This document shows, piece by piece, positions 22,931-54,750 of a stretch of 64,000 bases of DNA. Below the pieces are notes generated by a model that saw only the letters and a list, made by a program, of their open reading frames with translations, made no database searches and had not been told where the DNA came from. A program made the translations under genes and the position numbers. How positions within the stretch are numbered: position 1 is the first letter of the stretch; each line of letters opens with the position of its first letter. The stretch spans positions 248,001-312,000 of the IMG/VR virus record IMGVR_UViG_3300031884_000002; one strand, given 5' to 3'.

Positions 22931-23305
22931 TTATTTACGATATATTTGTTGATGGGGCTTGTCTCGTATAAAAGGTTTCATCTCTTCCGATTTAAGAGCC
23001 AATAAAAATGATTCTTTCCAAGAAAGTTCAACTGGATTGCCGACTTCATTCAATGTTTTACTTTCATTGTGTATTTTAGAAGCTAAACTTCTCCATTTAG
23101 AAGCGGCTTTCTTTCTATGATTTTCTTTATCTACTCCGTGATTATTTCTAAAATGTATTTCAAATTGTAATCTAGAATTATCTAACGGGAACATTACAGT
23201 TATAATTCTATCTCCTTCGTATAATATATAATTTTTATTTAATTTACTATATTCTTCATTTATTACTTGAGCTACAGTAGATTTAATTGTTTCTAAAATA
23301 TTCAT
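22931..23305 (-). CDS. hypothetical protein, putative internal head protein
   Basis: start moved to ATG 23305 (MNILETIKSTVAQVINEE), 4 nt after TATTTATA motif. Confidence 0.6.
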   Translation of the reverse strand: MNILETIKSTVAQVINEEYSKLNKNYILYEGDRIITVMFPLDNSRLQFEIHFRNNHGVDKENHRKKAASKWRSLASKIHNESKTLNEVGNPVELSWKESFLLALKSEEMKPFIRDKPHQQIYRK

Positions 23306-23395
23306 TATATATAAATATAACACATATAAATGACTACTAAAAATATTTTCATTTTCTTCGACTTTTTATTCTACGACATTATATGTATATAGTGT

Positions 23396-24364
23396 ATGAA
23401 TAAACAACAATTAAATAAGAAAAAAGTTATATGGGAAGAAAAAAACTTAACAGAACAATCGAAGAACTCCGAATCGCCCGCCGAATTAGACAACAACGAT
23501 TTTATAATAAACACAAAGAACGACTCAATGCCGAAACAATGCGAAAATATTGGGAAAATAAAAAAAATAAATTGGAATAATCCAGTAGAAGTAAAAGAAA
23601 GACAACAATTATATAATCAAAAAAATAAAGAAAAAATTAAATTACAACGTCGTTTATATTATATAAATAACAAACAAAAAGAAATTGAATATGCTAATAA
23701 ATATAATTCCGAAAATAAAGAAAAAATAAAAGAAGCCCGTAAATTAAATAAACATAGAACAAAAGAATATGATTCTAAATATAGACTAAAAAATAGAGAA
23801 AAAATTAAATTACGACAAAGATTTGATTATAAAATAAATACTAAAAAATATTTAGAAAAAGCTCATAGATATAATATAAATCACAGAGAAAAAATAAATA
23901 ATAATGCGAAAATATATAGAAAAATAATAAAAAATAAAGAAAACCGAAAAATATATAATAGAAATTATAATAGAATTAAAAATGTATTAGACGTAGAATA
24001 TAAAATAAAACATAGACTTAGAAATAGGTTGAATAAAATGATACATCGAAACAATAGAACAGCCTCAGCAATTAGCGATTTGGGATGTTCGATGGAAAAA
24101 TTTAAAAAATACATCGAAAGTAAATTTAAACCGGGAATGACTTGGGATAATTATGGAAACAATGGATGGCATTTTGACCATATACGTCCATTAGTATCAT
24201 TTAACTTAACTATTAAAGAAGAATTATTAGAGGCAGTTAATTATACTAATTTACAGCCGTTATGGGCGACAAGTGAAATAGCAAGAAAACACGGAGATAT
24301 GAGTTCAATAGGAAATTTAGAAAAAGGAAATAAAATCATTCTGGGTAAGATACTTCAAATGTAG
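23396..24364 (+). CDS. HNH/endonuclease VII-like homing endonuclease
   Basis: basic helical repeats then LGCS..FKKYIESKFKPGMTWDNYG..WHFDHIRP..NYTNLQPLW..NLEK; true start may be ATG 23528. Confidence 0.8.
   Translation: MNKQQLNKKKVIWEEKNLTEQSKNSESPAELDNNDFIINTKNDSMPKQCENIGKIKKINWNNPVEVKERQQLYNQKNKEKIKLQRRLYYINNKQKEIEYANKYNSENKEKIKEARKLNKHRTKEYDSKYRLKNREKIKLRQRFDYKINTKKYLEKAHRYNINHREKINNNAKIYRKIIKNKENRKIYNRNYNRIKNVLDVEYKIKHRLRNRLNKMIHRNNRTASAISDLGCSMEKFKKYIESKFKPGMTWDNYGNNGWHFDHIRPLVSFNLTIKEELLEAVNYTNLQPLWATSEIARKHGDMSSIGNLEKGNKIILGKILQM
23431..23580 (+). CDS. small basic helical protein overlapping the HNH gene 5' end in another frame
   Basis: ATG 23431-TAA 23580: MGRKKLNRTIEELRIARRIRQQRFYNKHKERLNAETMRKYWENKKNKLE; not in the ORF track. 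Confidence 0.55.
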   Translation: MGRKKLNRTIEELRIARRIRQQRFYNKHKERLNAETMRKYWENKKNKLE

Positions 24365-25157
24365 GATTATTTTCAATAAATAACTTCATTCTATCGTATA
24401 GACTATTATTTATTTTATTATAACTATCTTCACTTATTTCACCCGTTCTATCATCTGAATATTCTGGGGTTTCTTCATCGGAATATGTATTTGGAATTTC
24501 TGGTTTATTTTTTACTGCCGGAACAATTCTTTTAGGTTCTTGTTTATATTTTGGTCTTATTTTTGTAACTGGTTCCAACGTATCTTCTGGAGAAGTGTGA
24601 TCATCCTCTGGGCTGGGTGAGTCACTTGTTACTGGTTTTATTGCTTTTTGTTTATTTTTTTGAATAGATTTTTCAACTGATTTTTGTTGATTGTATTCTG
24701 GCTCAGGTGCTTTAACTCCAGTATCTAAATGGGAGCCTAGACTTATTAAGTGCTTACAAATTCCAATATTTGACTCGTTAAAATTTTTAGGTCGTTGCCC
24801 GTTATTAGTTGACAGTGCGGTTGAACCTATAGGTGCTACTCCTTGTTTATTTAAACCATAGGCATACTTGTATTTAAAATCGGGGCAGGAACACTCGCAT
24901 ATACAATTAACATCTTCTAAACTATTATGTTTTTTAATATCATCATTATAAAATTGTATATAACCTTTGTGCCGGTTGCCCGTGGTAGAAGGATTTGATT
25001 TATATGAAAAAACCATTCTTTCTTGATTGTCTCCAGATTGAACTGATAAATTTTTACTTGAAACTGTTTTAGCCCTATCAATACGTTTAGGATCGGAATG
25101 ACCTAGAAGATCTCTAAATGACATTTTTTCCAATAATAAATCTTTTAATTTAATCAT
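24336..25157 (-). CDS. SWIM zinc-finger protein, putative internal head protein
   Basis: CSCPDF...GICKHL (CxC..CxH); N-terminal MIKLKDLLLE. Confidence 0.65.
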   Translation of the reverse strand: MIKLKDLLLEKMSFRDLLGHSDPKRIDRAKTVSSKNLSVQSGDNQERMVFSYKSNPSTTGNRHKGYIQFYNDDIKKHNSLEDVNCICECSCPDFKYKYAYGLNKQGVAPIGSTALSTNNGQRPKNFNESNIGICKHLISLGSHLDTGVKAPEPEYNQQKSVEKSIQKNKQKAIKPVTSDSPSPEDDHTSPEDTLEPVTKIRPKYKQEPKRIVPAVKNKPEIPNTYSDEETPEYSDDRTGEISEDSYNKINNSLYDRMKLFIENNPTFEVSYPE

Positions 25158-25161
25158 AATA

Positions 25162-25169
25162 TATAAATA
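25162..25169 (-). promoter_or_regulatory. TATTTATA putative late promoter (representative - strand copy)
   Basis: also at 23310, 25588, 26420, 29775, 41495, 44620, 46996, 51316, 53795, 59841, 61236 upstream of - genes. Confidence 0.65.
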
Positions 25170-25577
25170 TCATGCGGCAACCAAAGAAGGATGTTCCCAG
25201 AGAGTTAATTCATGTTCGCCATCATCGACTAATTTTATTGTGTGTGCTAATCCTTCATCTCCGATAATATATGCAAGTTTTTCTATTTCTCTAAGTTGAA
25301 ATGATTTAAGTTTTGGAATAGAATTATTTCCTCTTATATATAATTCATCGGTTCCTCCCATCCATATCAACATTAAATATCCGAGTTTATTTAAATCATT
25401 ATATACATCATCTATTCTGTCGGCTAATTCACCGTAATCATAATTTCCATATTTATTTTTTAAAACATTTTCTGCCGCCCAACTAACGTGGTCATCAACT
25501 ACAAATAAATTACCATGAGGGTCGAGAATATATCTTTCTTCTCTGGATTCTAATAGAAGTCGTTTAAGTTTAATCAT
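25170..25577 (-). CDS. hypothetical protein, putative internal head protein
   Basis: 135 aa; N-terminal MIKLKRLLLE. Confidence 0.6.
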   Translation of the reverse strand: MIKLKRLLLESREERYILDPHGNLFVVDDHVSWAAENVLKNKYGNYDYGELADRIDDVYNDLNKLGYLMLIWMGGTDELYIRGNNSIPKLKSFQLREIEKLAYIIGDEGLAHTIKLVDDGEHELTLWEHPSLVAA

Positions 25578-25601: not shown

Positions 25602-26363
25602 TTATAATTGTTCCTTTAATTTAGACCTATGATATTTTACAGCAAATGTAGATATATTATATTTTTCTGCTATTTGAGGAATACTTAATATTTTGGATTT
25701 TATATCATTTATTAAATCATTTTTACAGATTTTCATTCTAAGTTTGGCGTCATTTGCTTTTTGTTTATTTTTTTCAGACATAGCCCCACGTTTTATTCCT
25801 TTGGTTTTGCTTGGATTACTATAATTCATTTTTCGATTTGCTAACATTGTTCTTCTTTCGTCGAATTTAATTTGGCCTTGCTCTGCTCCATATTTATTTA
25901 TAAACCAATCTAATGTAAATCTTCCTTTTGCTTTGTCTTTTTGTTTTTTTAATGCCTCCTCACTATGAGTTCGTCCAAACATAGGATTTCCTTCACCAGA
26001 ACATATGTCACTCATTTTTTCTATAAACGCATCTCTATTTGGATTATATGTTATGTTATCTCCTCCACTTGCTATATGACATATATTATATCCGATTCCT
26101 CTTATATGTGGCTTAAATATATCCAAATAATATTGTTCTCGCTCGAATAGTTTTTCCTGTATTGGTTCTACTTTTTCTAATATTAGAAAACTAAATTTAT
26201 CTTCTCCGTAAAAGTTCCAAGAATGTTGTAATTTTGGGTTTGTATGAATATTTAATTTCAATTCTCTTTTATGGTCGTACCATCGTCTATCTATATCTTT
26301 AGCACTTCCGATATAAAATTTACCAGTTATTTCGTTTGTTATTTTATATATTCCACTTTTCAT
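25602..26363 (-). CDS. GIY-YIG homing endonuclease with NUMOD3
   Basis: SGIYKITN..KFYIGSA..R..H; EREQYYLD; GYN; NPMFGRTHSEE. Confidence 0.9.
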   Translation of the reverse strand: MKSGIYKITNEITGKFYIGSAKDIDRRWYDHKRELKLNIHTNPKLQHSWNFYGEDKFSFLILEKVEPIQEKLFEREQYYLDIFKPHIRGIGYNICHIASGGDNITYNPNRDAFIEKMSDICSGEGNPMFGRTHSEEALKKQKDKAKGRFTLDWFINKYGAEQGQIKFDERRTMLANRKMNYSNPSKTKGIKRGAMSEKNKQKANDAKLRMKICKNDLINDIKSKILSIPQIAEKYNISTFAVKYHRSKLKEQL

Positions 26364-26478: not shown

Positions 26479-28206
26479 TTAGATCAAGTTAGCATCAGAT
26501 ACCAGTATGATCCCATAAAATTCGGGCCGGACTAGTTTCTTAGCGTAGCGGGTCATTACCCCCCTGCGAGGGGTAAAATTAATTGGATCATACACCAATG
26601 GAGTTTGAATCAAAGGAATATATGGAGAATAAACTGCACCAGTCTCCAAGAAGTTATTACCTCTAAAGCCCATCAAGATCAAGTTTTCTTGCATGTATGG
26701 GTTTTTATATACTTGGAATCTGCTTGCGAATGCTCCAACTTTGGAAACACCCATTGCAAACTTAGCAGAATCACCATCCGTATTAACTACAAATCCGGGA
26801 ATGGATTCCAAGATAGTAGCAACCGTTGGTCCCACGACCATGAAGTTAGCACCACCACGGAGAGTTAATTGATGAATACTATTGGAGATCTTTTGAATCT
26901 TTTGTCCAAGAGTTTGATACCAACTTGATTTGGTGTAGTAACCGAAACCTGCACCAGCGTTAGCAGCCGTTGAGTTATCAATAATCTGATAGCTATTCGC
27001 ACCAGTCTTGATAATATCACGATTGATCTTAGCACTCCAACGTTCCTTGTTGATGTTAGGAGCGCCGTTAATTAACATGTCAAGGATTTCGAGATCGATT
27101 TCCATTGATACATATTCCGACAATAATGCTGTTAATTCTGCTTCGGCATCGACAGAGTGATAAGCATTTAAATCTTGAGCCAATTCAGGAGTCCAAACGG
27201 CTTTCAATTTACGAGTTTTAGCAACAATAGGCTCACTATTCAATTGCAAGTTGATTTCGGGAATACCTATATCTTTATGCAATCCAGTAGAAGTACCACC
27301 AGCATCAGCAGAACCTTCAGTACCATGATCTTCGAAATCACCACGAGAGGTTGGCTCAGGTTGTAATGAGAAGTTAATGGTTGCTGGAGAAGTAATACCA
27401 GATCCACTAACAACGAAAATTAAATCATTAGGAGTATATCCACCATCATTAGGAGTAATGGTTGCACGAGTGAAACCGGGATAGTAGTTCAAAATACCAG
27501 AACCACTAACAGTAAACGAACGGATCGCCGATACATCAGGATATGATCCAGAATTAATATTGATACCGACACCAAATCCAGTAGTAGTAACTGTGAATAA
27601 TGAACCATTAGCTAAAGACGATGAAATCGCTTGATTAACAGGATCATTCACGTTACCAGTATCAAAATTAATATCAGATACACTTGCAGATGCAACTGTG
27701 ATAGAAGCAGTAGCAAAGTGATCATTGATGCTATATGCATAGCGACCAACACCATATAAACCACCAACAGGTGCATCAGTTGAACCGGATTTTACACCAG
27801 TACCACCGAATAATGATTGATAGTTAGTAGGAGAATCAGCAGTGAACGGACCATTTGACGTACCATACTTGAAGTCCAAATAGAATACTAATCCAGATGG
27901 CAAGTTCATGGGCTGTACGGAAACGAACTCCTTAGCAGCGATTTCAGCGAAAACACGGCGAACCAATGGCAAAGCTACACCAGCCCATTGTTCGGAGTTT
28001 CCTTGTGTGCCAGTAGCAGATGATTCTTCAATCAACTGTTTAGCTTGGTTTTCAAGCAATACTGACATGTTGCTCTTCTCGACTTGATTCTTCAAGCCTT
28101 CTAAGAGACCGGTTTTTTCCCATTTGGTTACTAAACCACGGGTTTCTTGTAACAATCTGGCTTGAGGATTCAAGGCAGAGATTAATAGTTGTTTTACATC
28201 ATTCAT
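26479..28206 (-). CDS. gp23: major capsid protein (T4 gp23-like)
   Basis: KWEKTGLLEGL, LLENQ, LPLVRRVF..SVQPMNLPSGLVFYL, AKTRKLKAVWTPELAQDL, YSPYIPL..FTPRRGVMTRY. Confidence 0.97.
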   Translation of the reverse strand: MNDVKQLLISALNPQARLLQETRGLVTKWEKTGLLEGLKNQVEKSNMSVLLENQAKQLIEESSATGTQGNSEQWAGVALPLVRRVFAEIAAKEFVSVQPMNLPSGLVFYLDFKYGTSNGPFTADSPTNYQSLFGGTGVKSGSTDAPVGGLYGVGRYAYSINDHFATASITVASASVSDINFDTGNVNDPVNQAISSSLANGSLFTVTTTGFGVGININSGSYPDVSAIRSFTVSGSGILNYYPGFTRATITPNDGGYTPNDLIFVVSGSGITSPATINFSLQPEPTSRGDFEDHGTEGSADAGGTSTGLHKDIGIPEINLQLNSEPIVAKTRKLKAVWTPELAQDLNAYHSVDAEAELTALLSEYVSMEIDLEILDMLINGAPNINKERWSAKINRDIIKTGANSYQIIDNSTAANAGAGFGYYTKSSWYQTLGQKIQKISNSIHQLTLRGGANFMVVGPTVATILESIPGFVVNTDGDSAKFAMGVSKVGAFASRFQVYKNPYMQENLILMGFRGNNFLETGAVYSPYIPLIQTPLVYDPINFTPRRGVMTRYAKKLVRPEFYGIILVSDANLI

Positions 28207-29690: not shown

Positions 29691-29827
29691 AAAAGTTTTT
29701 CTTATTCTCTGAAGTTATTAGAACCCCAATAATATTTTTATTTATTATCACTACAAAAGATTGTAGCATTTGAATATAAATATAATTAAAAAAACGAAAA
29801 ATGAAATTATTTTTTATATTTATGTTT

Positions 29828-30430: not shown

Positions 30431-30445
30431 TTTATATTTATAGTT

Positions 30446-30769
30446 ATGATATTGTTAAGAGAATTGCTATCGGATATGCATCATGAGAAGAAAAACGGCA
30501 TGTTACATGTCGAGGAATGGAAACTTCCTGAAGTAGAATATTTACATAATGTTGGATTTGATTTTTTAGATGATTATAAGATGGGAATTGATAAAAGTCC
30601 GTATTTAACCATTTATAAAAATGAAAACGAAACCGAAGAAAAAGGTAAACCGAAAGTATTTTTTACAGTGGAAGAAAAAGGAAAAAGCAATAAAACATTC
30701 AAAGAGTTTGGAGATGTAATATCATATTTTGATACATTTCCCCAGCATGAGATAGATAAAAGAAAATAA
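30446..30769 (+). CDS. hypothetical protein, putative internal head protein
   Basis: 107 aa; MILLRELL leader, TATTTATA 3 nt upstream. Confidence 0.6.
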   Translation: MILLRELLSDMHHEKKNGMLHVEEWKLPEVEYLHNVGFDFLDDYKMGIDKSPYLTIYKNENETEEKGKPKVFFTVEEKGKSNKTFKEFGDVISYFDTFPQHEIDKRK

Positions 30770-30790
30770 GATAAATCAATACCTGAAACA

Positions 30791-30798
30791 TATTTATA
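30791..30798 (+). promoter_or_regulatory. TATTTATA putative late promoter (representative + strand copy)
   Basis: also at 1362, 11934, 16826, 21085, 30435, 31974, 53863 upstream of + genes. Confidence 0.65.
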
Positions 30799-30801
30799 AC
30801 T

Positions 30802-31407
30802 ATGAGTATTCCCAAAACAACTAAATGGACTTTAAAAAAGATAGTAGAAAACCTTGAATCTATTCCTGATGGAGATGGATTTGGAACTGAGCCAAAAAAA
30901 TTAACATCCGAACAAAAGAAACAGTTAATGGAAATGGCGGCAATGTTTGAAAAATATGGGGAAGTATTTAAAAATGAAACGGCAATAATGGATTCTGCTA
31001 AATCCATGACACAACTATGTGAATTAGCTGAGACATATGCATTGAATGAATGTGGAGAACAATTTCAGACGGAAATTGTTAAGAAAGATATGATTGGAAT
31101 GAAGAAACGAGTTCAAGAATATGGGAAACTTGCCAAAGAATGTTATGCTAAGACTCAACAATTAAGAGTTGCCCATGAAGACATAGGACATATTTTAGAC
31201 AGATATTATGATACTAAAGCATTAGCCGAAGCTTATAATCAATCAGTTGATTCTGCTCCTATGACTTCACTTCAAATGGAATCTCATAATGGAAGTTTTA
31301 AACCATGTACTGATTGCGGAAAACTATTATATCGTGGAGAAGAATGTGCCGCATGTAAAGATACATTGGACGAATCAATTTCCAAGAATAATTTTCTGGC
31401 GGATTAA
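30802..31407 (+). CDS. conserved head-region protein with C-terminal CxxC..CxxC
   Basis: 201 aa; EDIGHILDRYY motif; TATTTATA 3 nt upstream. Confidence 0.6.
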   Translation: MSIPKTTKWTLKKIVENLESIPDGDGFGTEPKKLTSEQKKQLMEMAAMFEKYGEVFKNETAIMDSAKSMTQLCELAETYALNECGEQFQTEIVKKDMIGMKKRVQEYGKLAKECYAKTQQLRVAHEDIGHILDRYYDTKALAEAYNQSVDSAPMTSLQMESHNGSFKPCTDCGKLLYRGEECAACKDTLDESISKNNFLAD

Positions 31408-31895: not shown

Positions 31896-31901
31896 TGTGT
31901 A

Positions 31902-31930
31902 ATTATAACACAACTGAAAAAAAATGTCAA
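31902..31930 (-). promoter_or_regulatory. sigma70-type promoter, probably leaderless transcript
   Basis: TTGACA-17 nt-TATAAT with extended TG, 6 nt before ATG 31895. Confidence 0.85.
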
Positions 31931-31984
31931 TAAAATAATTTAATGTTTACATGATTATTAGAAAAGTTTTATATATTTATAATC

Positions 31985-34704: not shown

Positions 34705-34707
34705 CGA

Positions 34708-39879: not shown

Positions 39880-41484
39880 TTATCTAACGGCTATGGCATT
39901 TACATATGCCGAAATATCATATTTATCCAATGGCTGTTCTACAGAACCGGCACCATGAGCAGTAATATTACCTACTAATTTAGTTGGCTTTCCTTTATTA
40001 TTAGTAAATGGAATTGAAATCTGCCATTCTTTATATTTTGGTATTCCATTAGAAGTATCGGCATGTCCTCCATATTTAGCACTTTCGAGGGTAACGTCCA
40101 ATCCTAATTCTTTTAATTTGGTAAATATTTTATGTATTTGTTCCCAGCTATTATCAGAAAATAAACCTCTGGATAATTCCGCCAATACTTTATTTACAAA
40201 AGAAGTAGCCGCAACATTAGATTTACCTTCAAGTGGATTGGATGTAATTCCTATATTTTCTTCGTTGAAGTTTCCATAGGCATCAGCAGGACGTTTGGCA
40301 CCACGATTCATTCTCTTAGGAGGAAGTGATGTTTTATCTTGTGTTTCACGACATTTAGGACATTTATCAGTTCCTTTATCAACTACTCTACCACATCCTT
40401 TACATGTTCCAAAATTAGCATGATTTTCAATCTCCATTCCTTCAATTTCCATACCCTCTTTTACAAGATGTTGAGATACTTCTAAACAATCAGGACACAT
40501 TACTTTACAAGACCCCGGCTTCGATGGATGTGAAACATCTTTTCCACAATCACAACAATGATGTTGAATATCACTTTTTTCTTCTTCAAGTTTTTTATGT
40601 AATTTCCAAGCAGTTGCATATATGGCATCAGGATTATTTGGATATTCTTTTTTTAACTTATCATATATTTTTTTAGGAAACTTAGGTGGCAATTTCTCAT
40701 CTAATGTTTTCAAATCTGTATCGGAACCTAAATCTTCTTCCATTTTTCTCATTTTAGCATTCTGGTCTTCATAACTTTCTAAATTAGCACCGGCACCGTT
40801 AGACCACGGATCGAATCCTTCTGTTAATTTCGTTCCAAATCTTACTAAACTAACAGTATCCGAATGTCTATCATATACTAATGTATATTTTCCTACCTTA
40901 TATGTTTTATCATAAGTTCCCCAAGGTGCTTCTTGAGATACACTCATGGAATGTTCGTTTTCACCACCCATATCCCATTGAGACATATACTGAATTGCGG
41001 CTTTTGGACCTTTTGTATTTAATAAATCAATTACCGGTTTAGCATCATTATATTGTAAAGTAACTATAGTATAATAAGTTCTTCCTGCTTCATCAAGTCT
41101 AGGTTCATCACTGCGAACTCTCATTTCAGGAGCATGTGAATATTCTCCAGTATCCAGTTGATGTTCTGTATCATTTGCTCCACCATATTTAGATACTAAA
41201 TCTTGATACATCATTTCTTCCATAGACCCTTCCTGTGGTCCTCTTGAAATTTGTCCGGGAGAAAAATCAGATGTGCTTAATGCTGAATATAAATTACTAT
41301 CCTGTCCCCCATGATAATCATTAGCAAACCAATAAATGGCGGCTTCAGCATCATATTCAAATCCCTCTTCATTTCCAAATTGAGAACGAAGATATTCCAT
41401 CATTTCTTCTTTAGAAGGGTCTTGAATTGAAGTTTCATTCAAAACTTCCGTGATACATCGCTTGATTATTTGTTTTATATTCAT
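39880..41484 (-). CDS. multi-module putative internal head protein
   Basis: 534 aa; MNIKQIIKRCITEVLNE leader; modules separated by L/V/M-x-E sites; YATAWK motif; CxxC pairs. Confidence 0.6.
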   Translation of the reverse strand: MNIKQIIKRCITEVLNETSIQDPSKEEMMEYLRSQFGNEEGFEYDAEAAIYWFANDYHGGQDSNLYSALSTSDFSPGQISRGPQEGSMEEMMYQDLVSKYGGANDTEHQLDTGEYSHAPEMRVRSDEPRLDEAGRTYYTIVTLQYNDAKPVIDLLNTKGPKAAIQYMSQWDMGGENEHSMSVSQEAPWGTYDKTYKVGKYTLVYDRHSDTVSLVRFGTKLTEGFDPWSNGAGANLESYEDQNAKMRKMEEDLGSDTDLKTLDEKLPPKFPKKIYDKLKKEYPNNPDAIYATAWKLHKKLEEEKSDIQHHCCDCGKDVSHPSKPGSCKVMCPDCLEVSQHLVKEGMEIEGMEIENHANFGTCKGCGRVVDKGTDKCPKCRETQDKTSLPPKRMNRGAKRPADAYGNFNEENIGITSNPLEGKSNVAATSFVNKVLAELSRGLFSDNSWEQIHKIFTKLKELGLDVTLESAKYGGHADTSNGIPKYKEWQISIPFTNNKGKPTKLVGNITAHGAGSVEQPLDKYDISAYVNAIAVR

Positions 41485-43272: not shown

Positions 43273-43899
43273 TTAGTTCAATTCGGAGAGAATGTTATAA
43301 ATCAACTCGTCGGTTCGTTCCCATCGGTTGGTCATTGGATTTTTAACAATTCCTTCGGCAAGTGAAATTTGTTCTACGGGTGCCATAAACGCACCTTGAA
43401 CTGAAGGATTACTTACAAAGTCCCAGCATATAATACTGTAATCATTATTAACTTCAACCGAAGATTCTGATAATTTTCTTACGGAACCAGTTCCACGGCT
43501 TGATATTCCAACTCTGATATTACACTTGAATAACTCTCTCAAAATATTTCCACTTGGAGTTGTTAATACATCAATGTCAGCAATTAAATCATTACCATTC
43601 CATTTAAGACCAACTATATTATGAGATACATTTTTAAGATTTACAACTTCAGTTTCAGCATGGTCTAATTCTCCAACTGCTCGTTTTTCATTTATAAATG
43701 TATTAACATATTCCGATACACTTTTATCCAAAACATCATCGGGATATACTCTTCCATTTTGATTGCGGACACCCTTTCTTTGTACTAAGCCACGAACTCT
43801 AAACGGTTTGGCTTCATTCATTAGGGACTCTTTTAATAAAGTATCATCTACCTCAAATGTTATACATTCTATTAACAATTTTTTATTTATATCATTCAT
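43273..43899 (-). CDS. gp21: prohead protease (T4 gp21-like)
   Basis: NQNGRVYP, GELDH, VSH, TPSGNI, GISSRGTGS, WDFVSNPS. Confidence 0.95.
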   Translation of the reverse strand: MNDINKKLLIECITFEVDDTLLKESLMNEAKPFRVRGLVQRKGVRNQNGRVYPDDVLDKSVSEYVNTFINEKRAVGELDHAETEVVNLKNVSHNIVGLKWNGNDLIADIDVLTTPSGNILRELFKCNIRVGISSRGTGSVRKLSESSVEVNNDYSIICWDFVSNPSVQGAFMAPVEQISLAEGIVKNPMTNRWERTDELIYNILSELN

Positions 43900-44630: not shown

Positions 44631-45485
44631 TTATTTTTCTCTATAAACCTTCTTTATTCGTAAATCCCAATATTGGTCTTTTTTATTCTCTTCCAATTTA
44701 ACAACTTTTAACAACGGGGCTTTATTATAAAATAGATTTTGTAAACCTTTATTATCTAATTGATATTTTAACATATTGGACGGTATTTTTAATTCAAATA
44801 CCGATACTATTACTCCATGTTCTTTTCGGTCAGTCCAACCTATTTTTTTAACTAAATCTTTTAACGGAGTTTCTTTTTTCTTTAACAGTAAAGGAAGCCA
44901 TGATTTAATATCTTCAGTTATATCGAAAATTGAATATGCCTCATAATGTTTATTAACATTAACATCTTTTTCTTCTTCTTTAATATGAGATATAGGTTCC
45001 GGATTTAAAACAGGGACTTTAGATTGATTGCTATTAGGGCTATTATTGACAGGATTAGGATTATTGTTATTATCATGTGGAACCTCCGGTTGTTTAATTT
45101 GGGCTGGATTGACTCCCTTTTGAGGAGATGGTTGACCGGTTGCCTGTCCTATAATTTTAATTTTCTCACTCGTGGATAAAAAATATTTTTTTGGTTTAGA
45201 TGACATATCAGTAGCAATTATCACATAATGCCCATAATAATTTTCAATTGTAACGTTATTTATATCAAACTCATATTTGGTAGAAAACTGTTTATATCCT
45301 CTTGAAGATTTAGCAATAACTCTTTTACCCTTTAGATATTGGTTAATTTTAGTTTGATATTTTTTAATCAATTCTTTAGATTCTGTTTTTAATGAAGTTA
45401 AGAATTCAGAATACTCAATTCCAATATCAAAAAATTGAAGATTATCATCTGTTGTATTTTCTAACAATGTCGCTAATATTATCAT
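44631..45485 (-). CDS. hypothetical protein, putative head protein
   Basis: 284 aa; MIILATLLE leader; P/N-rich linker. Confidence 0.6.
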   Translation of the reverse strand: MIILATLLENTTDDNLQFFDIGIEYSEFLTSLKTESKELIKKYQTKINQYLKGKRVIAKSSRGYKQFSTKYEFDINNVTIENYYGHYVIIATDMSSKPKKYFLSTSEKIKIIGQATGQPSPQKGVNPAQIKQPEVPHDNNNNPNPVNNSPNSNQSKVPVLNPEPISHIKEEEKDVNVNKHYEAYSIFDITEDIKSWLPLLLKKKETPLKDLVKKIGWTDRKEHGVIVSVFELKIPSNMLKYQLDNKGLQNLFYNKAPLLKVVKLEENKKDQYWDLRIKKVYREK

Positions 45486-45757: not shown

Positions 45758-46084
45758 TTATTCTATCATTTTATCAGGACGACGAGCCAAATCTTTTTTT
45801 CCAATTGGAGTTAATTCATATCCAAGTGCATTGCTTCCAGCTAACGCTTTTTTACTACCTCCATCATTTTTTGAAAATGCGGCAGGAATAGTATAACCTT
45901 CACCACCTGTAACCGACGATTCCTCGATTTTTTCCTCTTCTTCATCTTCCATTATTCTTCGTTGAAGTGGAAGTTTTCCGGTTGCTGGAGCAACTGCTCC
46001 CGTTGCCGATTCTTCCGTAGTCAATTCTTCCAACAATGTCTTAGTTATAATTTTAACTAATGATTTTAAATCGGATTGTTTCAT
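45758..46084 (-). CDS. small acidic head-region protein
   Basis: 108 aa; LKSLVK..LLEE leader, GYTIPAAF motif. Confidence 0.6.
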   Translation of the reverse strand: MKQSDLKSLVKIITKTLLEELTTEESATGAVAPATGKLPLQRRIMEDEEEEKIEESSVTGGEGYTIPAAFSKNDGGSKKALAGSNALGYELTPIGKKDLARRPDKMIE

Positions 46085-47031: not shown

Positions 47032-50000
47032 TTATAGTATTTCCTTTATATTTACCTCATCTAACATAGATGGTAATGTTGATTCTTTAATCAATTCTTT
47101 TTTTACATCAATAGGCTTGTCAAAAAACTCAGATAAAGACAATATTAACTTGGAGTTTCTGTTTTTCATTTGTTTATTATCTTGTACCGGTTTTTTTATT
47201 TCTTCAAGTGCATATGGAGAATCTCCTTCAAAGTTTTGATATAATTCGCTTTTCTTTTTAAACTCGCTATTCTTTCTTGGTTTTCTATTGAGTTCTAAAT
47301 GTCCCAATGGGTCTTCTCCAAATGGATGATCGCTCGCCTTATGCTCTCCACTTTGGTCTCGATTAGCATCTTCTTTAACTATATCTTCCGGTTTTCCGAT
47401 TTTAGGCTTCTCTTCGGTTTCGGGATTTGGTTCTTCTTCATTTCCCTCTCCTCCTTCTTTATTCCCTTCTCCCTCCTCACCCTCTCCTTCTAAATCTCCA
47501 AGATCGGAAAGTCCACCTCCACCACCATGTCCTCCACCACCACCGAGACCACCCAATCCACCACCTTCTCCTTTTTCTCCACCTCCACCACCCGTTCCTA
47601 TTTTCTTCATAGGCATAGCTGGATCATCTCCATCATTTTCAATAGCCGCCAATCTATATTTGCGTTTTGCGAACTCTATTACTGATTTCATTTCCGTTTC
47701 AATATCATCATTAGACATTTGGAATATATATTTATAGATATATTCAGGAGAAAATAAACCACTTTCCATCATATCTGTAGACAATGCTGTTTTTTCAGAT
47801 AAAATGCTTATTTTCTCTTTTTCTAATATAGTACTAGAATTAGTTAGTTCAATTTTGAAATTGATTAAACTTTCATCTCTATATCCCTGAGCATATAAAT
47901 GTATAACTCCTATCTTTTCCAATTCCACGCACAGTATTTTCTGAATACGTTGAATAGTTCGGGCAAATCGTATATCTTCATTGCTTAATGTTGCCTTACT
48001 ACCACCTTCTTCTCCAAAGTTTAAGAATGTTTTTGGTATTTTTAAAGCGGCAAACATCTTATTTTTAAGATATTCAACATCATCAATACCTGTCCAATCC
48101 ATACCTGGTAGAGTATCTATTCTAGTTCCCGAATCACTTCCACGAGTAGGGATATAAAAGTCATCCAACATATTTTGAAGATTGAACTTGAGATTATATT
48201 CTCCTCGTTCATTCATATATGGAACTTTTTTAATTTTATCCTGTAATTTCTGCATGTAATTATCAACTTCGGCTGGTGGAATGTTGCCTATATCAACATA
48301 AAATATTCTTCTTTCGGGAGCACGAACTACACGATGAATCATCATTGCGTCTTCCAATAGGGATAATTGTTTCCATATTCTTCTTGCACCTTCCAAATAA
48401 GAACGACCATATGGGAAGAAGTTAGAATCGCCCGTTAATCTAAAATGGCAAATCTGCCAGTTTTCCAATACTTCGGCTTGGGATGTATCAGTCGGACGGA
48501 TTTGAAACTTGACATACTTCTTATTATAAGGGTCGGCATTTTCAATTCGCTCTACATTTTCCGCATTTATAGGCTCCACCATATAAACACCATACTCTGG
48601 ACTAACATATACTTTTAAAAAATGATCTCCTAATTTTAAAGTATTTCTAAGCCATCCCCATAAATTAAAGTCTAGGTTTAAAATATCATCGTATAAGTTT
48701 TCAAGTATTTCTTTAACATTATTATTTTCACAGTGTACGGTAAGCATTTTACCAAGTGCATTAGTCGTAAGACAATTATGGGTAAATAATTTAGATCCAT
48801 CCTTAGTTTCTATCGCATATAAATGTGAACTAGTTCCTACATTTACTAAATCATATGCTTTATATTCGCCACATGGTTCTACTGATATTACTCTATGATT
48901 ATTTGATTTTGTATAATCAGCGTATGAGTTATATCCTATAATTTTATATTTTAATCTATCTATACGAGTAATATTATATTTATTACATATTTGTTTATTT
49001 AATACACTACAATCTTCTCTGAGAATGTTATATTTCTGTTTTAATTCTTTTCTAGATAATCCGTTTATTATATCTTTTTCATATTCCTCCATATTTATGT
49101 GTTCGAAACGATTTACGGCTTCAATCCATCTTCCGTTTTTATTTTTGGTTAACTTATAACCATTTCCAAACATTCCATTCTTATTTCCATTTCTTCCAAA
49201 CTCTTTATTTCTATCTTCTTTAGACATTCCTTCCAGTCGCTTTAACATAGTAAAATGACAATTTTCGGAATGATATTTTCTAGTTTCATCATTCCAATAT
49301 CTTCTATGTCCTTCTCTGGTTTTTTCTTTATATTCGTGTGTTTTTGTTTTATCTGCCCATATTTCTTTATTAAATTGAGAGTGTATTTTTTTATGCTCTA
49401 TATAACCAACCCATTTAAGATATTCTGGACTATTATTTAATTTATTAAACGACGAATGATGAATTACTTTATCGGTTTCACATACTGTTTCTCGCTGAGT
49501 TATTAACGAAGGTTCATTTTTTGCAACTAATCTATGAGTAAATTGCCATTTTCCATTTATATATAACATCTCATATCCATTCATAAATTTGAAATTGGAT
49601 AATTTAGTATTAAATATTTTTAACGATGTCCCTAATTCAAGTTTATCGGTTGATATAATAGACATATCTGATTTTACCCACATATGATTAGACGTACATT
49701 TTATCTCGGTTCCATCGTCCAATAATACTTTATACATTGGTTTAATACCATTATATGCCACTCGTTCACATTTTTCGGGTTTGAAGTTCCCATCGGAATC
49801 TATAGAATATACCCAGAAATCTGTTTTATTTTGATTATATAAATCTTCAATTTTTACTTTATCTCCATTCAATAATGGTATAATAGTGTTCCCCTCTATG
49901 CATTCGTCTGCTACAATATCTAAAGTTGCATTTAGAATTGGGTCCATATCCATTGTATTGTGTGAAAATACAGTATCTGATGCAAAATTTTGATATTTTT

Positions 50001-51294
50001 CAACTGTTACATCATATACATCTATTTCTCCGACATATTCTATGGATTTTACTTTATGATTTAATTTAGTAAAAATCTCTTGTTTAAACGATTTCCAGTT
50101 ATGATTGTTAGATTTTAATCGATTGGTTATAAGTGATATATCACAATGTAAATATTTAGATACTTCTTTAAGATTTAATTTTCCATAATTTCTATAATAC
50201 TCAAAAGATTGCTCTTTTATTATATCAAATGTTAATTCGTCTCTATAATTTGGATTTTTTCCTAAATTATAATTTCTGGTTTTACAATATGTTTTTAATG
50301 ATTTAGAACGTACTTCATTAGATTCTTTCGTATGTATTTTTCCATAAAATGGATTATTAGTTCCAGATCTTTCACCATTCCAATGATGAAACTTTCTATT
50401 TTTATATCCTTCGGAAGAATGTATTTTTTCTAATGTTTTTTGTTTATTTTCAAACGACCACATTTTATCAGTTACTAATTTAATATGATATTGTTTATGT
50501 GCTGTTTTATCCATTATAACTAAATTATCCGGCATATTATATGATGGATTGAACTGTTGATGATGAACCACTTCATTATCTTTGAGAGGTCTATTAAATT
50601 GTTCTGCTATTACATTGTGTTCTGGTTGCCATCCTTTTGAAAAATTATAAACATGCCTATATCCTTTGTTATAAAAATCTTTTTGATAAAACGGCATTAT
50701 AGAGTCCCCTACTTTTATATCTTCTAATTTTTTATAATCTCCATTTCTCATTAAGAACGGATGTCCTCCGCTTGCTATTATATATTTACCCTTTTCAAAT
50801 GTTAATTTCCATGCTTTTAATTTTCCTCCATCTTTTTTTCTTGGATGATATGCATTTCCCAATTTTATAGAGTTTGATTCGTGGTCATAAGAATAAACAT
50901 AAAATCTTTCTTGTGGTTTATTTTTATATTTTTCAGCCAACTCTGCTATTGTAGGATACGTTCCATCTGGCAGTGGAATGATAGTTTCTCCTGCCACACA
51001 TTGATAATCCCTAAACATTTCAATACGAGCCGCTTGATAAGATAATGAAAAGTCTCTAGAATATGCATTATACGCAGTTGAACGAATACGATTAAATCTA
51101 TCTCGGAGAGAGTTTCTATCTCCTGCCATCATCGAATGGTCGGTGTCTTTAACAATTAATTGTTTTCCACCGACATTTCTAACTATTGTTTCTGATGAGA
51201 ATAAAGTTTTTAACCGAGCATATAAAGATTGTTTCTTTATATCTACGATATCATCGTTAATTGAATTTGGTCTATTTATTTGGTTAAGTGCCAT
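47032..51294 (-). CDS. gp20: portal protein (T4 gp20-like) precursor with two inteins
   Basis: [68 protein letters not shown]; spliced product 696 aa. Confidence 0.95.
   Translation of the reverse strand: [1420 protein letters not shown]
48775..49902 (-). mobile_element. intein 2 (376 aa) with HNH homing endonuclease
   Basis: starts [10 protein letters not shown], block B CTSNH, ends AYDL..FTHN followed by Cys; internal [20 protein letters not shown]. Confidence 0.92.
49957..51000 (-). mobile_element. intein 1 (348 aa) with HNH homing endonuclease
   Basis: starts [10 protein letters not shown], ends VYDVTV..NF..VFSHN followed by Thr; internal EHNVIA..VVHH..N..PDNL and NUMOD3. Confidence 0.92.
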
Positions 51295-52957: not shown

Positions 52958-53616
52958 ATCGTATCTAATTTATATTGTTTACATAACTTAGCATACTCTT
53001 TTTTATTTTCTGCTTTTATTTTTGTGGCTTCCTTAATAAGTTTCAATACTTTTTTTAAATCCGATTTAGAATCGGCTAATATTTTATCTTTATTAGTATT
53101 TACCCATACCGCATCGTAACCAACTCCATCTTCACAGGGAAGTTTTACATCTCCATTGTCATTAGTAAAATATTCAACTATCTCTTTTAATTTTTCTTTG
53201 CTATCTTTCAAATCTCCAAGTGCATAAGATGATAATTTATATTTTTCATATACATCCCATGCCCCTACAATTCTCAATTTGGTTTCATAATCTATCAAAC
53301 AATTTTCACATAATCCGGTTCGATTGAAAAAATATTCATCTCGTTTAGTTCCCCATTTAATGTTTAATTTACATTTACAGATTTTATTTCCAATGGCTTC
53401 TCTAATTATGTCTCCTTGGGTCTTGGTTAATTTAACTATTTTGCCATTTTCTTTTCTATATTTAATGTCGTTATGGTCTATCCATTCTTCCCCTTCTTTT
53501 CTAAACTTATCTTTTTCTGCTATGTGATTAGATACTTTAATCTCTGTCTTTTCTCCTTTTTGCCATTTTTTAATGACTTCGATGTTACCCATTGATTTAT
53601 GTAATTTTATAGCCAT
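52954..53616 (-). CDS. hypothetical protein upstream of terminase
   Basis: 220 aa; RKEGEEW.D, CxC and CxxC; ATGA-coupled to terL. Confidence 0.65.
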   Translation of the reverse strand: MAIKLHKSMGNIEVIKKWQKGEKTEIKVSNHIAEKDKFRKEGEEWIDHNDIKYRKENGKIVKLTKTQGDIIREAIGNKICKCKLNIKWGTKRDEYFFNRTGLCENCLIDYETKLRIVGAWDVYEKYKLSSYALGDLKDSKEKLKEIVEYFTNDNGDVKLPCEDGVGYDAVWVNTNKDKILADSKSDLKKVLKLIKEATKIKAENKKEYAKLCKQYKLDTI

Positions 53617-53619
53617 AAC

Positions 53620-53790
53620 TTATTTTTTGATTTTTAATTTTTCCCACTGTTTAAGGTTATTTGATTTCCAAAGAAGATATTCTTTTTTAAGATGGAAATA
53701 ACATGATTCTGGAACCATAATTGAAAAATACCGCCAGCCATCGCTTTCTTTTAATTTTCTATATTTTGATTGGTATTCTTTATTTGCCAT
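53620..53790 (-). CDS. small basic hypothetical protein (56 aa)
   Basis: MANKEYQSKYRKLKESDGWRYFSIMVPE...; TATTTATA 4 nt upstream; not in the ORF track. Confidence 0.55.
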   Translation of the reverse strand: MANKEYQSKYRKLKESDGWRYFSIMVPESCYFHLKKEYLLWKSNNLKQWEKLKIKK

Positions 53791-53874
53791 CTCTTATAAA
53801 TAGCGTTAAAAACACTAAATAACACTAAAATAAACTAATTATGTTAATATAAGATAATAATATATTTATATAAT

Positions 53875-54750
53875 ATGATTAGTTTAAAACAATTATTAGA
53901 AGGAATATCGTATCTATCAAATACTAATAAACTGAATTTTAGTTTTGATAGTGATTTTCCAGCACCCGACGATAATTTAATATACTTGAAACCAAATAGA
54001 AGAAATTCTAGGTTATATAATATAAAAGGATTTAAAATTTTTTATGGATATTATTTCAATCGAAATTTTACTCCTAATAAACCTTCGTATTTTAAACCAA
54101 ATAATACACAATCTATAAATGATGCAAGAACAACAATAAAACACGTTGATATTAAAAAAATATATATGTTTAATGGGATGGATTCTGCTGGAAATTATAC
54201 ATGGACTAGGGATGAATCTCCAATTATAAAAATGATAGATTTAGCAATTGAACGATTTTCTGAATTGGTAGATTTAAACTCATTTACATCCATCATATCG
54301 GCTCCTTCTAGTTCTCGGTTGAATGATTTAATATTAGATAGATTTCAAATGAGTGTTGGAACCCATATAATTACAAAAAATGCACTTCAAAAAAATGAAA
54401 TAAATCAAATTGCATATTTTATGGATGAATATAATAAATTAAGCGATGACGGTAAGCGAAAATTTCACTCTGTAAAAAACGGAATTGTTAAAAAAACAGG
54501 AACATTTGAAATGAAACACGTCCCTCCTACTATGCGAAGTTTATTCCATAATTTTATATCATTGAAACAAAATAATCAAAAAGAATCTATTAAAATAGCA
54601 AATAAAATATCAAATGGAAAAGTTTTAATAATAGACGATACTATAGGAACTGGTGGAACATTTTTAGAAATAGTTAGAGAAATAAAACCATTAAAACCAA
54701 AAGAAATATATTTATTTGGACTTTTGCAAGATTATTATTATAGTGTATAA
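53875..54750 (+). CDS. type I phosphoribosyltransferase-fold protein
   Basis: PRPP-binding motif KVLIIDDTIGTGGT; APSSS loop; MISLKQLLE leader. Confidence 0.8.
   Translation: MISLKQLLEGISYLSNTNKLNFSFDSDFPAPDDNLIYLKPNRRNSRLYNIKGFKIFYGYYFNRNFTPNKPSYFKPNNTQSINDARTTIKHVDIKKIYMFNGMDSAGNYTWTRDESPIIKMIDLAIERFSELVDLNSFTSIISAPSSSRLNDLILDRFQMSVGTHIITKNALQKNEINQIAYFMDEYNKLSDDGKRKFHSVKNGIVKKTGTFEMKHVPPTMRSLFHNFISLKQNNQKESIKIANKISNGKVLIIDDTIGTGGTFLEIVREIKPLKPKEIYLFGLLQDYYYSV

What the first reader, a model, noticed from the sequence alone, without database searches (positions are those of the whole stretch)
22931..54750. Family of unrelated proteins sharing an N-terminal 'MIxLxxLL(x)E' leader: candidate capsid-targeting system
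Seen: MIKLKDLLLE (25157), MIKLKRLLLE (25577), MISLKQLLE (53875), MIILATLLE (45485), MILLRELL (30446), plus longer variants MNIKQIIKRCITEVLNE (41484), ..LKSLVKIITKTLLEE (46084), MNILETIKSTVAQVINEE (23305), ..WTLKKIVE (30802). Downstream sequences are unrelated and most have the late motif. Known: T4 internal proteins carry a ~10-aa capsid-targeting sequence ending in E that gp21 removes at I/L-x-E. Inference: a portable packaging tag loading diverse cargo into the head for injection.
Basis: partly seen in the sequence, partly recalled or inferred. Interest (0 to 1): 0.7.

Follow-up and report, generated by a model that had tools for sequence, protein, structure and literature searches.

The report
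Shared head-targeting leader on phage proteins
A 354-kb T4-like lake phage puts the same ten-residue start (MIKLKxLLxE) on at least ten unrelated proteins. The leader most likely works like the phage T4 capsid-targeting tag that loads proteins into the head for injection, and it recurs across hundreds of uncultured relatives.

Summary
A scoring matrix built only from relatives finds ten ORFs in this 353,772-bp phage that start with M-I-K-L-K-x-L-L-x-E, at 16 bits or more; the next best scores 6.3. Three lie in the window and seven outside, six of them in one cluster. The mature parts are mutually unrelated, upstream DNA is not conserved, and the Leu codons vary synonymously, so selection acts on the peptide.

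The leader has the same register as the T4 capsid-targeting sequence MKTYQEFIAE: hydrophobic residues at 4, 7 and 8, Glu at 10. It ends in the I/L-x-E site of the gp21 protease, and a gp21 homologue sits in the window.

The leader is common in IMG/VR. There, 123 of 140 pattern matches start an ORF, against 14 of 119 in cellular genomes. It travels with gp21/gp23 phages and clusters beside the protease gene. Recognisable cargo includes an ADP-ribosyltransferase, a 2H phosphoesterase, a CCA-adding enzyme, Zeta-like kinases and lysozymes.

Packaging, cleavage and injection are inferred, not shown. The "longer variants" and two of the short ones are unproven. I rate this a new variant of a known kind.

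The parts
24336..25157 (-). Leader-bearing gene, 273 aa. Leader MIKLKDLLLE is encoded at 25128-25157. The mature part is a SWIM-type zinc-finger protein. It lies downstream of the MCP gene: the GIY-YIG endonuclease gene (25602-26363) and the 135-aa leader gene (25170-25577) lie between.
   Evidence: PSSM 26.9 bits. 26 homologues. In alignment A2 the Glu just before the conserved KMSF core is nearly invariant, while the leader is 10 aa, about 14 aa or absent. C..CxC..CxH is invariant. Fold search top hit is a SWIM-type domain, E 2.2e-4. TATTTATA lies 4 nt before the ATG.
25170..25577 (-). Leader-bearing gene, 135 aa. Leader MIKLKRLLLE is encoded at 25548-25577. Mature part is of unknown function.
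   Evidence: PSSM 22.0 bits. No Pfam or PHROG match. Atlas gives only viral hypothetical clusters. Late-like motif upstream.
53875..54750 (+). Leader-bearing gene, 291 aa. Nine-residue leader form MISLKQLLE|G. C-terminal phosphoribosyltransferase-like domain.
   Evidence: PSSM 18.3 bits with one gap. Pfam Pribosyltran 2.1e-6 at residues 238-278. The 9-residue form recurs in relatives: MIKLKDLVEG in G014 and MIKLKLLLEG in G009. Late-like motif upstream.
44631..45485 (-). Borderline leader gene, 284 aa, MIILATLLE|N. It is the first non-endonuclease gene upstream of the protease gene. Candidate prohead-core protein.
   Evidence: PSSM only 4.9 bits. A homologue in L123 (31% identity over residues 23-129) starts with the canonical MIKLKSLLNE. 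In protease-selected relatives the gene just upstream of gp21 often carries the leader, e.g. MISLVKLLTE and MIRLKSLME.
30446..30769 (+). Borderline member, 107 aa, MILLRELLSD. Position 10 is Asp, not Glu.
   Evidence: PSSM 6.3 bits. The homologue in G009 starts MQLTELLNIVGD, without the Glu. In T4 IPIII, Asp at position 10 blocks processing but still allows targeting (PMC9026906). Status here is undecided.
43273..43899 (-). gp21-type prohead protease (Peptidase_S77), 208 aa. The presumed enzyme that removes the leaders.
   Evidence: Pfam PF03420, 3.7e-23. phmmer against T4 gp21 structure 5JBL, 8.5e-12. His in GELDH, Ser in ISSRG and Asp in DFVSNPS are invariant across 17 clade members (A3). 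Its own N-terminus has LIE-11; T4 gp21 has LIE-9 (PMC9026906).
28242..29690 (-). Presumed scaffold (gp22-like) protein, 482 aa, immediately upstream of the MCP gene.
   Evidence: Assigned by position and composition only. No Pfam match. Acidic, low-complexity, with 14 [LI]xE sites. Its N-terminus resembles the gene upstream of the MCP in G014 and G018.
26479..28206 (-). gp23-type major capsid protein, 575 aa, with candidate maturation sites LLE52|N and LIE60/E61|S.
   Evidence: Pfam Gp23, 3.8e-71. The alignment to mature T4 gp23* places its first residue near residue 49 here. Site list.
47032..51294 (-). gp20-type portal protein interrupted by intein(s), 1420 aa. Marks the start of the head module.
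   Evidence: Portal_T4 2.3e-63, Intein_splicing 1e-27 (2 stretches), HNH_3.
45758..46084 (-). Small acidic head-module protein, 108 aa, with a 20-residue N-terminal helix ending LLEE. Candidate gp67/gp68-like core protein.
   Evidence: Sequence and four [LI]xE sites. Sits between the portal and protease genes. No family match. The leader status is an inference.
39880..41484 (-). Long-variant candidate, 534 aa, MNIKQIIKRCITEVLNE|T.
   Evidence: Late-like motif upstream. Fits only the post-hoc long pattern. A 14-residue leader, MISFSKILKQVLTE, replaces the short one on orthologues of the 273-aa protein, so a long class is plausible but untested here.
22931..23305 (-). Long-variant candidate, 124 aa from the ATG, MNILETIKSTVAQVINE|E.
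   Evidence: No family match.
30802..31407 (+). Weak long-variant candidate, 201 aa, ..WTLKKIVE|N.
   Evidence: Late-like motif upstream. Fits neither the matrix nor the long pattern.

Best explanation
MIKLKxLLxE is a capsid-targeting propeptide of the T4 CTS type.

The proposed mechanism has four steps:
1. The tagged proteins are made late.
2. The amphipathic N-terminus (hydrophobic residues at 2, 4, 7 and 8) docks them onto the scaffolding core while the gp23 shell closes around it.
3. The gp21-type protease (window 43273-43899) then cuts after Glu-10, or Glu-9 in the short form, at its L-x-E site.
4. The mature protein stays in the head and leaves with the DNA at the next infection.

Because the tag is short and self-contained, it has been placed on many unrelated proteins. 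In this genome these include an ADP-ribosyltransferase (the T4 Alt analogue), a 2H phosphoesterase, a CCA-adding/HD enzyme, a SWIM zinc-finger protein, a PRTase-like protein and an 873-aa helical-repeat protein.

What is shown: the shared leader, its statistics, its peptide-level conservation, the protease gene, the genomic linkage and the cargo domains.

What is inferred: docking to the core, cleavage, retention in the virion and injection.
For: 1. The family is real. Ten ORFs score 16 bits or more on a matrix trained only on relatives; the next best is 6.3. The motif occurs 0-1 times internally in 107,863 residues.

2. Selection is on the peptide. Upstream DNA is unrelated. Leu codons at positions 4, 7 and 8 follow background usage, and the leader persists in loci of 27-47% GC. 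Conservation stops abruptly after Glu-10, with I2, K3, L4 and E10 at 90% or more.

3. The register matches T4. The T4 CTS is MKTYQEFIAE (bioRxiv 10.1101/2021.01.19.427310). In IPIII, residues 4 and 7 govern targeting and residues 8 and 10 govern processing (PMC9026906). Here L4, L7, L8 and E10 are the conserved positions. T4 gp21 cuts after Glu in I/LxE (PMC12991175).

4. A gp21 homologue with conserved His, Ser and Asp is present. The MCP has L-x-E sites where T4 gp23 is cut.

5. The tag is detachable. Orthologues of the 273-aa protein carry a 10-residue leader, a 14-residue leader or none, always joined at the Glu. CCA enzymes in relatives occur with the leader (L013, L045, L092) and without it (L059).

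6. The leader is linked to T4-type heads.
- 18 of 32 leader contigs of 40 kb or more encode Peptidase_S77 and 16 encode Gp23, although most are fragments 12-40% complete.
- Complete relatives have 3-12 leader starts, against 0-1 for the reversed pattern.
- In G014, five tandem leader genes lie between the protease and scaffold genes.
- In loci chosen by protease alone, 13 of 23 leader ORFs lie within -1.5 to +3.5 kb of gp21 on the same strand.

7. The leader is virus-specific. 123 of 140 IMG/VR matches are the first ATG of an ORF of 60 aa or more, against 14 of 119 in 596 Gb of cellular genomes.

8. The cargo fits injection. It includes ART-PolyVal, Zeta_toxin/AAA_33 kinases, Peptidase_M23, two lysozyme families, NUDIX, GNAT and 2H phosphoesterases. 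Mature parts in relatives are basic, median pI 9.25 against 6.97, p = 5e-7, like the T4 internal proteins.

9. All strong members lie downstream of the late-like TATTTATA motif or in operons that begin with it.
Against: - There is no direct evidence of packaging, cleavage or injection. No virion proteome exists for this phage or, as far as I could find, for any phage carrying the leader.
- The protease-leader complex prediction gave no answer.
- The leader shares no sequence with the T4 CTS beyond Met-1, Glu-10 and the hydrophobic register.
- In this genome most mature cargo is acidic or neutral (pI 4.7-7.2), unlike the T4 internal proteins.
- Some cargo, such as the PRTase-like protein and the HAD and nucleotide-kinase-like enzymes in relatives, has no obvious reason to be pre-packaged.
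- In Mel-JY01 the leader cluster lies among replication and RNA-ligase genes, not in the head module.
- One complete leader-bearing contig (G016, 207 kb) gave no S77 or Gp23 match.
Confidence: 0.7

Rival explanations
1. The leader is a docking or processing tag for something other than the head interior. It could be a shared helix that assembles the enzymes into a cytoplasmic complex, a recognition tag for a phage chaperone, or a propeptide cut by gp21 late in infection to switch the enzymes on or off without packaging them.
For: Many cargo proteins are ordinary soluble enzymes: CCA-adding enzyme, PRTase-like, HAD/NT5C and P-loop kinases. The Mel-JY01 cluster sits beside replication and RNA-ligase genes. 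Own-genome cargo is not basic.
Against: It does not explain the exact T4-CTS register with a terminal L-x-E. It does not explain the concentration of leader genes around gp21 and between the protease and scaffold genes. It does not explain cell-wall hydrolases and ART-PolyVal among the cargo. A ten-residue tag is unlikely to inhibit unrelated folds.
Confidence: 0.15
2. The conserved start is an mRNA-level translation-initiation element. It would be an AU-rich 5' coding region for Shine-Dalgarno-less or leaderless late transcripts, not a functional peptide.
For: The late-like motif ends about 4 nt before the ATG, so the transcripts may be nearly leaderless. No Shine-Dalgarno sequence is visible. 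GC3 in the leader is 0.17, against 0.24 in codons 11-40.
Against: Leu codons vary among six synonyms close to background usage, and Glu-10 is invariant while position 9 is free. The peptide persists at 47% GC. Genes inside operons without their own promoter also carry it. The abundant late genes (MCP, portal, tail-fibre-like) lack it.
Confidence: 0.07
3. The similarity is only a remnant of common descent or of a recombination hotspot, such as duplicated gene starts, and has no function of its own.
For: Leader genes are often tandem, which is what duplication would give.
Against: The mature parts belong to different folds and Pfam families. Flanking DNA is not conserved. The leader is kept across proteases only 51-57% identical. 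Conservation is position-specific.
Confidence: 0.03

Closest known systems
Phage T4 capsid-targeting sequence (CTS) of internal proteins IPI/IPII/IPIII and Alt, removed by prohead protease gp21 (Mullaney & Black 1996; reviewed in PMC3012670, PMC9026906, PMC5694885)
   Same: A propeptide of about 10 residues at the extreme N-terminus of otherwise unrelated proteins. Hydrophobic residues at 4, 7 and 8 and Glu at 10. It ends in I/L-x-E. A gp21 (S77) protease, a gp22-like scaffold and a gp23 MCP are encoded nearby. The gene sets are hypervariable and often tandem. An ADP-ribosyltransferase is among the cargo, as Alt is in T4.
   Different: The sequence differs: MIKLKxLLxE against MKTYQEFIAE. The phage clade differs: freshwater and marine uncultured T4-like phages whose MCP is about 52% identical to those of Mel-JY01 and immuto. 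There are many more tagged genes per genome (10 here, up to 12 in G009). Much of the cargo consists of sizeable enzymes rather than small basic proteins. Function has not been tested experimentally.
Long N-terminal propeptides of ejection and inner-body proteins in phiKZ/SPN3US-type giant phages (PMC5694885)
   Same: Head-internal proteins in a jumbo phage are processed by a gp21-related protease at a short motif ending in Glu.
   Different: Those propeptides are mostly longer than 100 residues, the motif is S/A/G-x-E, the protease family is S80, and there is no shared 10-residue leader.
Polyvalent proteins of phages and conjugative elements (from my own knowledge: Iyer et al. 2017, J Bacteriol)
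   Same: The domain repertoire overlaps: ART-PolyVal, Zeta-toxin-like kinase, M23 peptidase and lysozyme. The proposed role is also shared: delivery together with the DNA to act first in the new host.
   Different: Polyvalent proteins fuse the domains into one giant polypeptide. Here each domain is a separate gene with its own leader. This genome's 482-aa protein is an exception: it fuses two parts that carry separate leaders in L126 and G009.

Membership tests
T4-type CTS / internal-protein system | The same short N-terminal propeptide (10-20 aa) on otherwise unrelated proteins of one phage | tested here: met
   Ten ORFs at 16 bits or more. Mature parts are unrelated.
T4-type CTS / internal-protein system | The propeptide ends in the gp21 cleavage motif I/L-x-E | tested here: met
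   L8-x-E10, or L7-L8-E9 in the 9-residue form. E10 is invariant in 156 non-redundant leaders, though the selection pattern required it. Of the 40 MIKLK starts that missed the exact scan pattern, most still have Glu at position 10 and a few have it at position 9.
T4-type CTS / internal-protein system | Targeting residues at positions 4 and 7, processing residues at 8 and 10 (IPIII mutagenesis) | tested here: met
   L4, L7/I7, L8 and E10 are the conserved positions. The T4 data are from PMC9026906. This is a match of register only, not a functional test.
T4-type CTS / internal-protein system | Sequence similarity to the T4 CTS MKTYQEFIAE | tested here: not met
   Only M1 and E10 are identical.
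T4-type CTS / internal-protein system | The phage encodes a gp21 (Peptidase_S77) prohead protease, a scaffold and a gp23 MCP | tested here: met
   The scaffold is assigned by position only.
T4-type CTS / internal-protein system | [quoted passage not shown] | not testable with these tools
   Needs virion proteomics or a tag-reporter packaging assay.
T4-type CTS / internal-protein system | The propeptide is removed by the protease | tested here: inconclusive
   The complex prediction of protease with residues 1-40 of the 135-aa protein gave no answer. Needs N-terminomics or an in vitro cleavage assay.
T4-type CTS / internal-protein system | Cargo is ejected into the host with the DNA | not testable with these tools
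   No experiment is available.
T4-type CTS / internal-protein system | Cargo consists of small, basic, DNA-associated proteins (IPI-III) | tested here: inconclusive
   In relatives, median length is 158 aa and median pI 9.25 against 6.97. In this genome pI is 4.7-7.2 for 8 of the 10 strong members, and sizes run from 135 to 873 aa.
Sec/Tat or lipoprotein signal peptide | A hydrophobic core of about 7-15 residues after a basic N-region | tested here: not met
   The leader is 10 residues with alternating charged and hydrophobic positions. Residues 11-14 are polar and variable.
Polyvalent proteins | Many effector domains fused in one very large polypeptide | tested here: not met
   The domains are separate genes, each with its own leader.

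The most novel reading that the evidence does not exclude
The leader would make the injected proteome readable from sequence alone across a large clade of uncultured freshwater and marine T4-like phages. At least 598 IMG/VR contigs carry this protease type. On this reading, these phages pre-package enzymes such as a CCA-adding/HD enzyme, 2H phosphoesterases of the LigT/Acb1 type, ART/Tpt1-like transferases, Zeta/AAA_33 kinases and NUDIX/HAD enzymes. These would act as a ready-made kit for RNA repair and for degrading defence signalling molecules, working before any phage gene is expressed.
Probability: 0.3. Interest if true: 0.8.

Novelty: new variant of a known kind. Interest (0 to 1): 0.62.

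Why it matters
If the leader is a capsid-targeting tag, a ten-residue motif is enough to list the proteins a phage injects. That could be done for hundreds of uncultured T4-like phages without growing any of them.

The list already contains enzymes that look like counter-defence or host-takeover tools: an ADP-ribosyltransferase, an Acb1/LigT-like phosphoesterase, a tRNA CCA-adding enzyme and Zeta-like kinases. About 80% of the cargo has no Pfam family match. That gives a focused set of candidates for new anti-defence functions.

It would extend the T4 CTS principle well beyond the T-even phages, where the sources I could search describe it. It would also offer a second, sequence-distinct tag for loading foreign proteins into phage heads.

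A culturable carrier exists, Microcystis phage Mel-JY01, so the idea can be tested directly.

Tried and rejected
- **Protease-leader complex.** Predicting the protease with residues 1-40 of the 135-aa leader protein gave 'no answer', score 0.00. This is not evidence either way.
- **Isolate searches.** Megablast of the window against isolates found nothing. tblastn of two cargo families against 50,697 phage records also found nothing, so no annotated or proteomically studied homologue was available.
- **Literature.** Searches for 'MIKLK', 'Mel-JY01' and 'Immutovirus' returned nothing about this leader.
- **Protein atlas.** Searches for three cargo proteins gave only weak leads: ankyrin/PPR-like repeats, viral hypothetical clusters and a possible GNAT-like fold.
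- **Context of a distant SWIM-family homologue.** This gave no annotated neighbours.
- **Shared DNA cassette.** A promoter-plus-leader module spread by recombination was considered and rejected, because the upstream DNA is unrelated.
- **Signal peptide.** Rejected on sequence grounds.
- **Long-leader pattern.** It is enriched, 5 hits against about 0.5 expected. I do not count this as a test, because the pattern was written from the same examples.
- **Single-sequence protease search of IMG/VR.** This found one locus only. The alignment-based search was needed.

Full report
**What the window is.** The window is bases 248001-312000 of a 353,772-bp IMG/VR virus record that CheckV rates complete. 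It recurs in at least 17 lake-water metagenome runs. The window carries a T4-type head module:
- a gp23 MCP at 26479-28206(-) (Pfam Gp23, 3.8e-71);
- a gp21-type prohead protease at 43273-43899(-) (Peptidase_S77, 3.7e-23; T4 gp21 structure 5JBL, 8.5e-12);
- an intein-interrupted gp20 portal at 47032-51294(-);
- a large terminase at 51344-52957(-).

The nearest isolates by MCP, at about 52% identity, are Microcystis phage Mel-JY01 and Flavobacterium phage immuto. The uncultured 484-kb record LR756508 is similarly close.

**The observation.** All quoted N-termini are present. A crude ORF set of 525 genes holds 8 that start M[IL]xLxx[LI][LI]xE. The motif occurs 0 times internally with the Met and once without it, in 107,863 residues.

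I then built a position matrix from 156 non-redundant leaders found in other phages and scored every ORF start of this genome. Ten ORFs score 16.1-26.9 bits, and the next best scores 6.3.
- Three are in the window: 24336-25157, 25170-25577 and 53875-54750. The last is a 9-residue form, MISLKQLLE|G.
- Seven are outside, in genome coordinates. One is 105993-108614 (873 aa). Six lie in a single co-oriented run at 231004-237744, interrupted by a GIY-YIG homing endonuclease.
- MIILATLLE (44631-45485, 4.9 bits) and MILLRELLSD (30446-30769, 6.3 bits, Asp at position 10) are borderline.
The pattern I wrote from them is enriched, but that test is circular.

The mature parts are mutually unrelated.

**Peptide or nucleic acid?** Selection acts on the peptide.
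- The 70 nt upstream of the leader genes share nothing.
- In 156 leaders, Leu codons at positions 4, 7 and 8 use all six synonyms at close to background frequencies.
- The leader is kept in loci of 27-47% GC.
- Conservation ends abruptly after Glu-10. Positions 2, 3, 4 and 10 are at 90% or more, while positions 11-14 show no preference.
- There is a mild AU enrichment, with GC3 of 0.17 against 0.24. That is ordinary for gene starts.

**Distribution.** Of these, 123 are the first ATG of an ORF of 60 aa or more, often in tandem runs of two or three.

There, only 14 of 119 matches are gene starts, and several of those belong to families also seen in the viral contigs.

Within the 120 viral loci, 187 of 1,816 ORFs start with MIKL. 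Of the 40 MIKLK starts that missed the exact scan pattern, most still have a hydrophobic pair at 7-8 and Glu at 10.

Among isolates and public genomes:
- Mel-JY01 has four tandem leader genes.
- immuto has one or two.
- LR756508 has a cluster with a lineage variant, MxKFKNLLFE.
- Rhodothermus phage RM378 and Methylophilales phage Melnitz have none.

**Link to the T4-type head.** Several results tie the leader to gp21/gp23 heads.
- Of 32 leader contigs of 40 kb or more, mostly fragments 12-40% complete, 18 encode Peptidase_S77 and 16 encode Gp23. Their proteases are 51-57% identical to the window's, with invariant His, Ser and Asp.
- Complete relatives carry 3-12 leader starts, against 0-1 for the reversed pattern.
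- In G014 (195 kb), five tandem leader genes fill the space between the protease gene and the scaffold and MCP genes.
- In 80 loci chosen by protease alone, from at least 598 contigs, 10 of the 27 loci of 15 kb or more hold a leader ORF. Of 23 leader ORFs, 13 lie within -1.5 to +3.5 kb of the protease gene on the same strand.
- The gene just upstream of gp21 often carries the leader. That is the position of the window's borderline 284-aa gene, whose homologue in L123 starts with the canonical MIKLKSLLNE.

**Comparison with the T4 CTS.** The T4 CTS is MKTYQEFIAE (bioRxiv 10.1101/2021.01.19.427310). Mutagenesis of IPIII placed targeting at residues 4 and 7 and processing at residues 8 and 10. 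Asp at position 10 blocks cleavage but not targeting (PMC9026906). T4 gp21 cuts after Glu in I/LxE (PMC12991175).

The new leader conserves exactly L4, L7, L8 and E10. So the register is the same although the letters are not.
- The window's MCP has L-L-E52 and L-I-E60 close to where mature T4 gp23* begins in the alignment.
- The protease itself begins with ...LIE-11; T4 gp21 has LIE-9.
- The presumed scaffold has 14 [LI]xE sites.

**The tag is detachable.**
- The 273-aa protein next to the MCP belongs to a SWIM zinc-finger family (invariant C..CxC..CxH; fold hit to a SWIM-type domain). Its 26 homologues start with a 10-residue leader, a leader of about 14 residues (MISFSKILKQVLTE) or none. The Glu abuts the conserved KMSF core in nearly all.
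- CCA-adding enzymes in relatives occur with a leader (L013, L045, L092) or start directly at the conserved domain (L059).
- The two halves of this genome's 482-aa ART protein are separate leader-bearing genes in L126 and G009.

**Cargo.** In this genome:
- ART-PolyVal ADP-ribosyltransferase with a weak Tpt1 signal, 482 aa;
- 2H phosphoesterase of the LigT/Acb1 type, 259 aa;
- PolyA_pol/CCA-adding enzyme with an HD domain, 517 aa;
- a PRTase-like C-terminus, 291 aa;
- the SWIM protein;
- five proteins with no Pfam family match.

Across 135 non-redundant leader proteins from relatives, about 110 have no Pfam family. The rest include Zeta_toxin/AAA_33 kinases (6), two lysozyme families, Peptidase_M23, Mom, NUDIX, GNAT, NT5C, ART-PolyVal and a tRNA-ligase CPD domain.

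Several of these are the domains known, from my own knowledge of the polyvalent-protein literature, as co-delivered effectors. T4's own packaged enzyme Alt is an ADP-ribosyltransferase (PMC9026906).

Mature parts in relatives are short (median 158 aa) and basic (median pI 9.25 against 6.97 for other ORFs, p = 5e-7). This genome's are mostly acidic or neutral.

**Timing.** A TATTTATA motif ends about 4 nt before the ATG of 65 ORFs. These include tail-fibre-like genes, the portal gene and most in-window leader genes. The scaffold-MCP operon has it 85 nt upstream. The outside cluster and the 873-aa gene follow ORFs that carry it. This fits late expression but is not proof of it.

**Verdict.** The best explanation, at confidence 0.7, is a capsid-targeting propeptide of the T4 CTS kind, removed by the gp21 homologue after Glu-10. 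The rivals are:
- a tag for some other assembly or protease-controlled switch (0.15);
- an mRNA-level initiation element (0.07);
- a functionless remnant (0.03).

Packaging, cleavage and injection remain inferred. The one structural test I could run gave no answer.

The principle is known from T4. What appears new, within the literature I could search, is the leader sequence, its spread across a large uncultured clade, the number of tagged genes per genome and the enzyme-rich cargo.

Noticed in passing
window 47032-51294 (-): The portal gene is 1420 aa. It is a T4-type portal interrupted by intein splicing domains (two stretches) with an HNH/NUMOD3 endonuclease.
   Followed up: partly
genome-wide, e.g. 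window 25158-25169, 53863-53874 and 29770-29790: A TATTTATA motif ends about 4 nt before the ATG of 65 of 525 ORFs, including structural genes and many homing-endonuclease genes. This suggests a late-type promoter that gives nearly leaderless mRNAs. No Shine-Dalgarno sequence is visible.
   Followed up: partly
window 36836-37150 (-): A 68-aa ORF matches the middle of Gp23 (6.7e-11). The genome search saw the same region with two TGA stops. It may be a decayed or split gp23/gp24-like gene.
   Followed up: no
window 29700-43270: About 13.5 kb is inserted between the protease gene and the scaffold gene, which are adjacent in T4. It holds NAMPT (32924-34291), an IMPDH/GMP-reductase-like gene (38634-39611), DUF5662, NUMOD3 endonucleases and a DUF7487+REase+Mom-like protein (41506-43239).
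   Followed up: partly
window 25602-26363 (-); L007 6497-7471 (genome 234497-235471): GIY-YIG/NUMOD3 homing endonucleases sit between the MCP and the leader genes, and inside the six-gene leader cluster.
   Followed up: no
window 54753-57950 (-): A 1065-aa fusion of a Metallophos nuclease and an AAA_23/SMC ATPase. It looks like an SbcCD or gp46/gp47-type pair in a single polypeptide.
   Followed up: no
LR756508.1 330975-337263 (loci L143-L148): A 484-kb uncultured phage has a cluster of genes starting with a lineage-specific leader variant, M-x-K-F-K-N-L-L-F-E.
   Followed up: partly
IMG/VR loci such as L048, L058, L069, L075 and L079; G014 125181-125906: A recurrent leader-bearing family has the motif QQLPxxxKxHFLEIIS. 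In G014 its gene lies one small ORF (74 aa) downstream of the protease gene. It may be a conserved prohead-core protein of this clade.
   Followed up: partly
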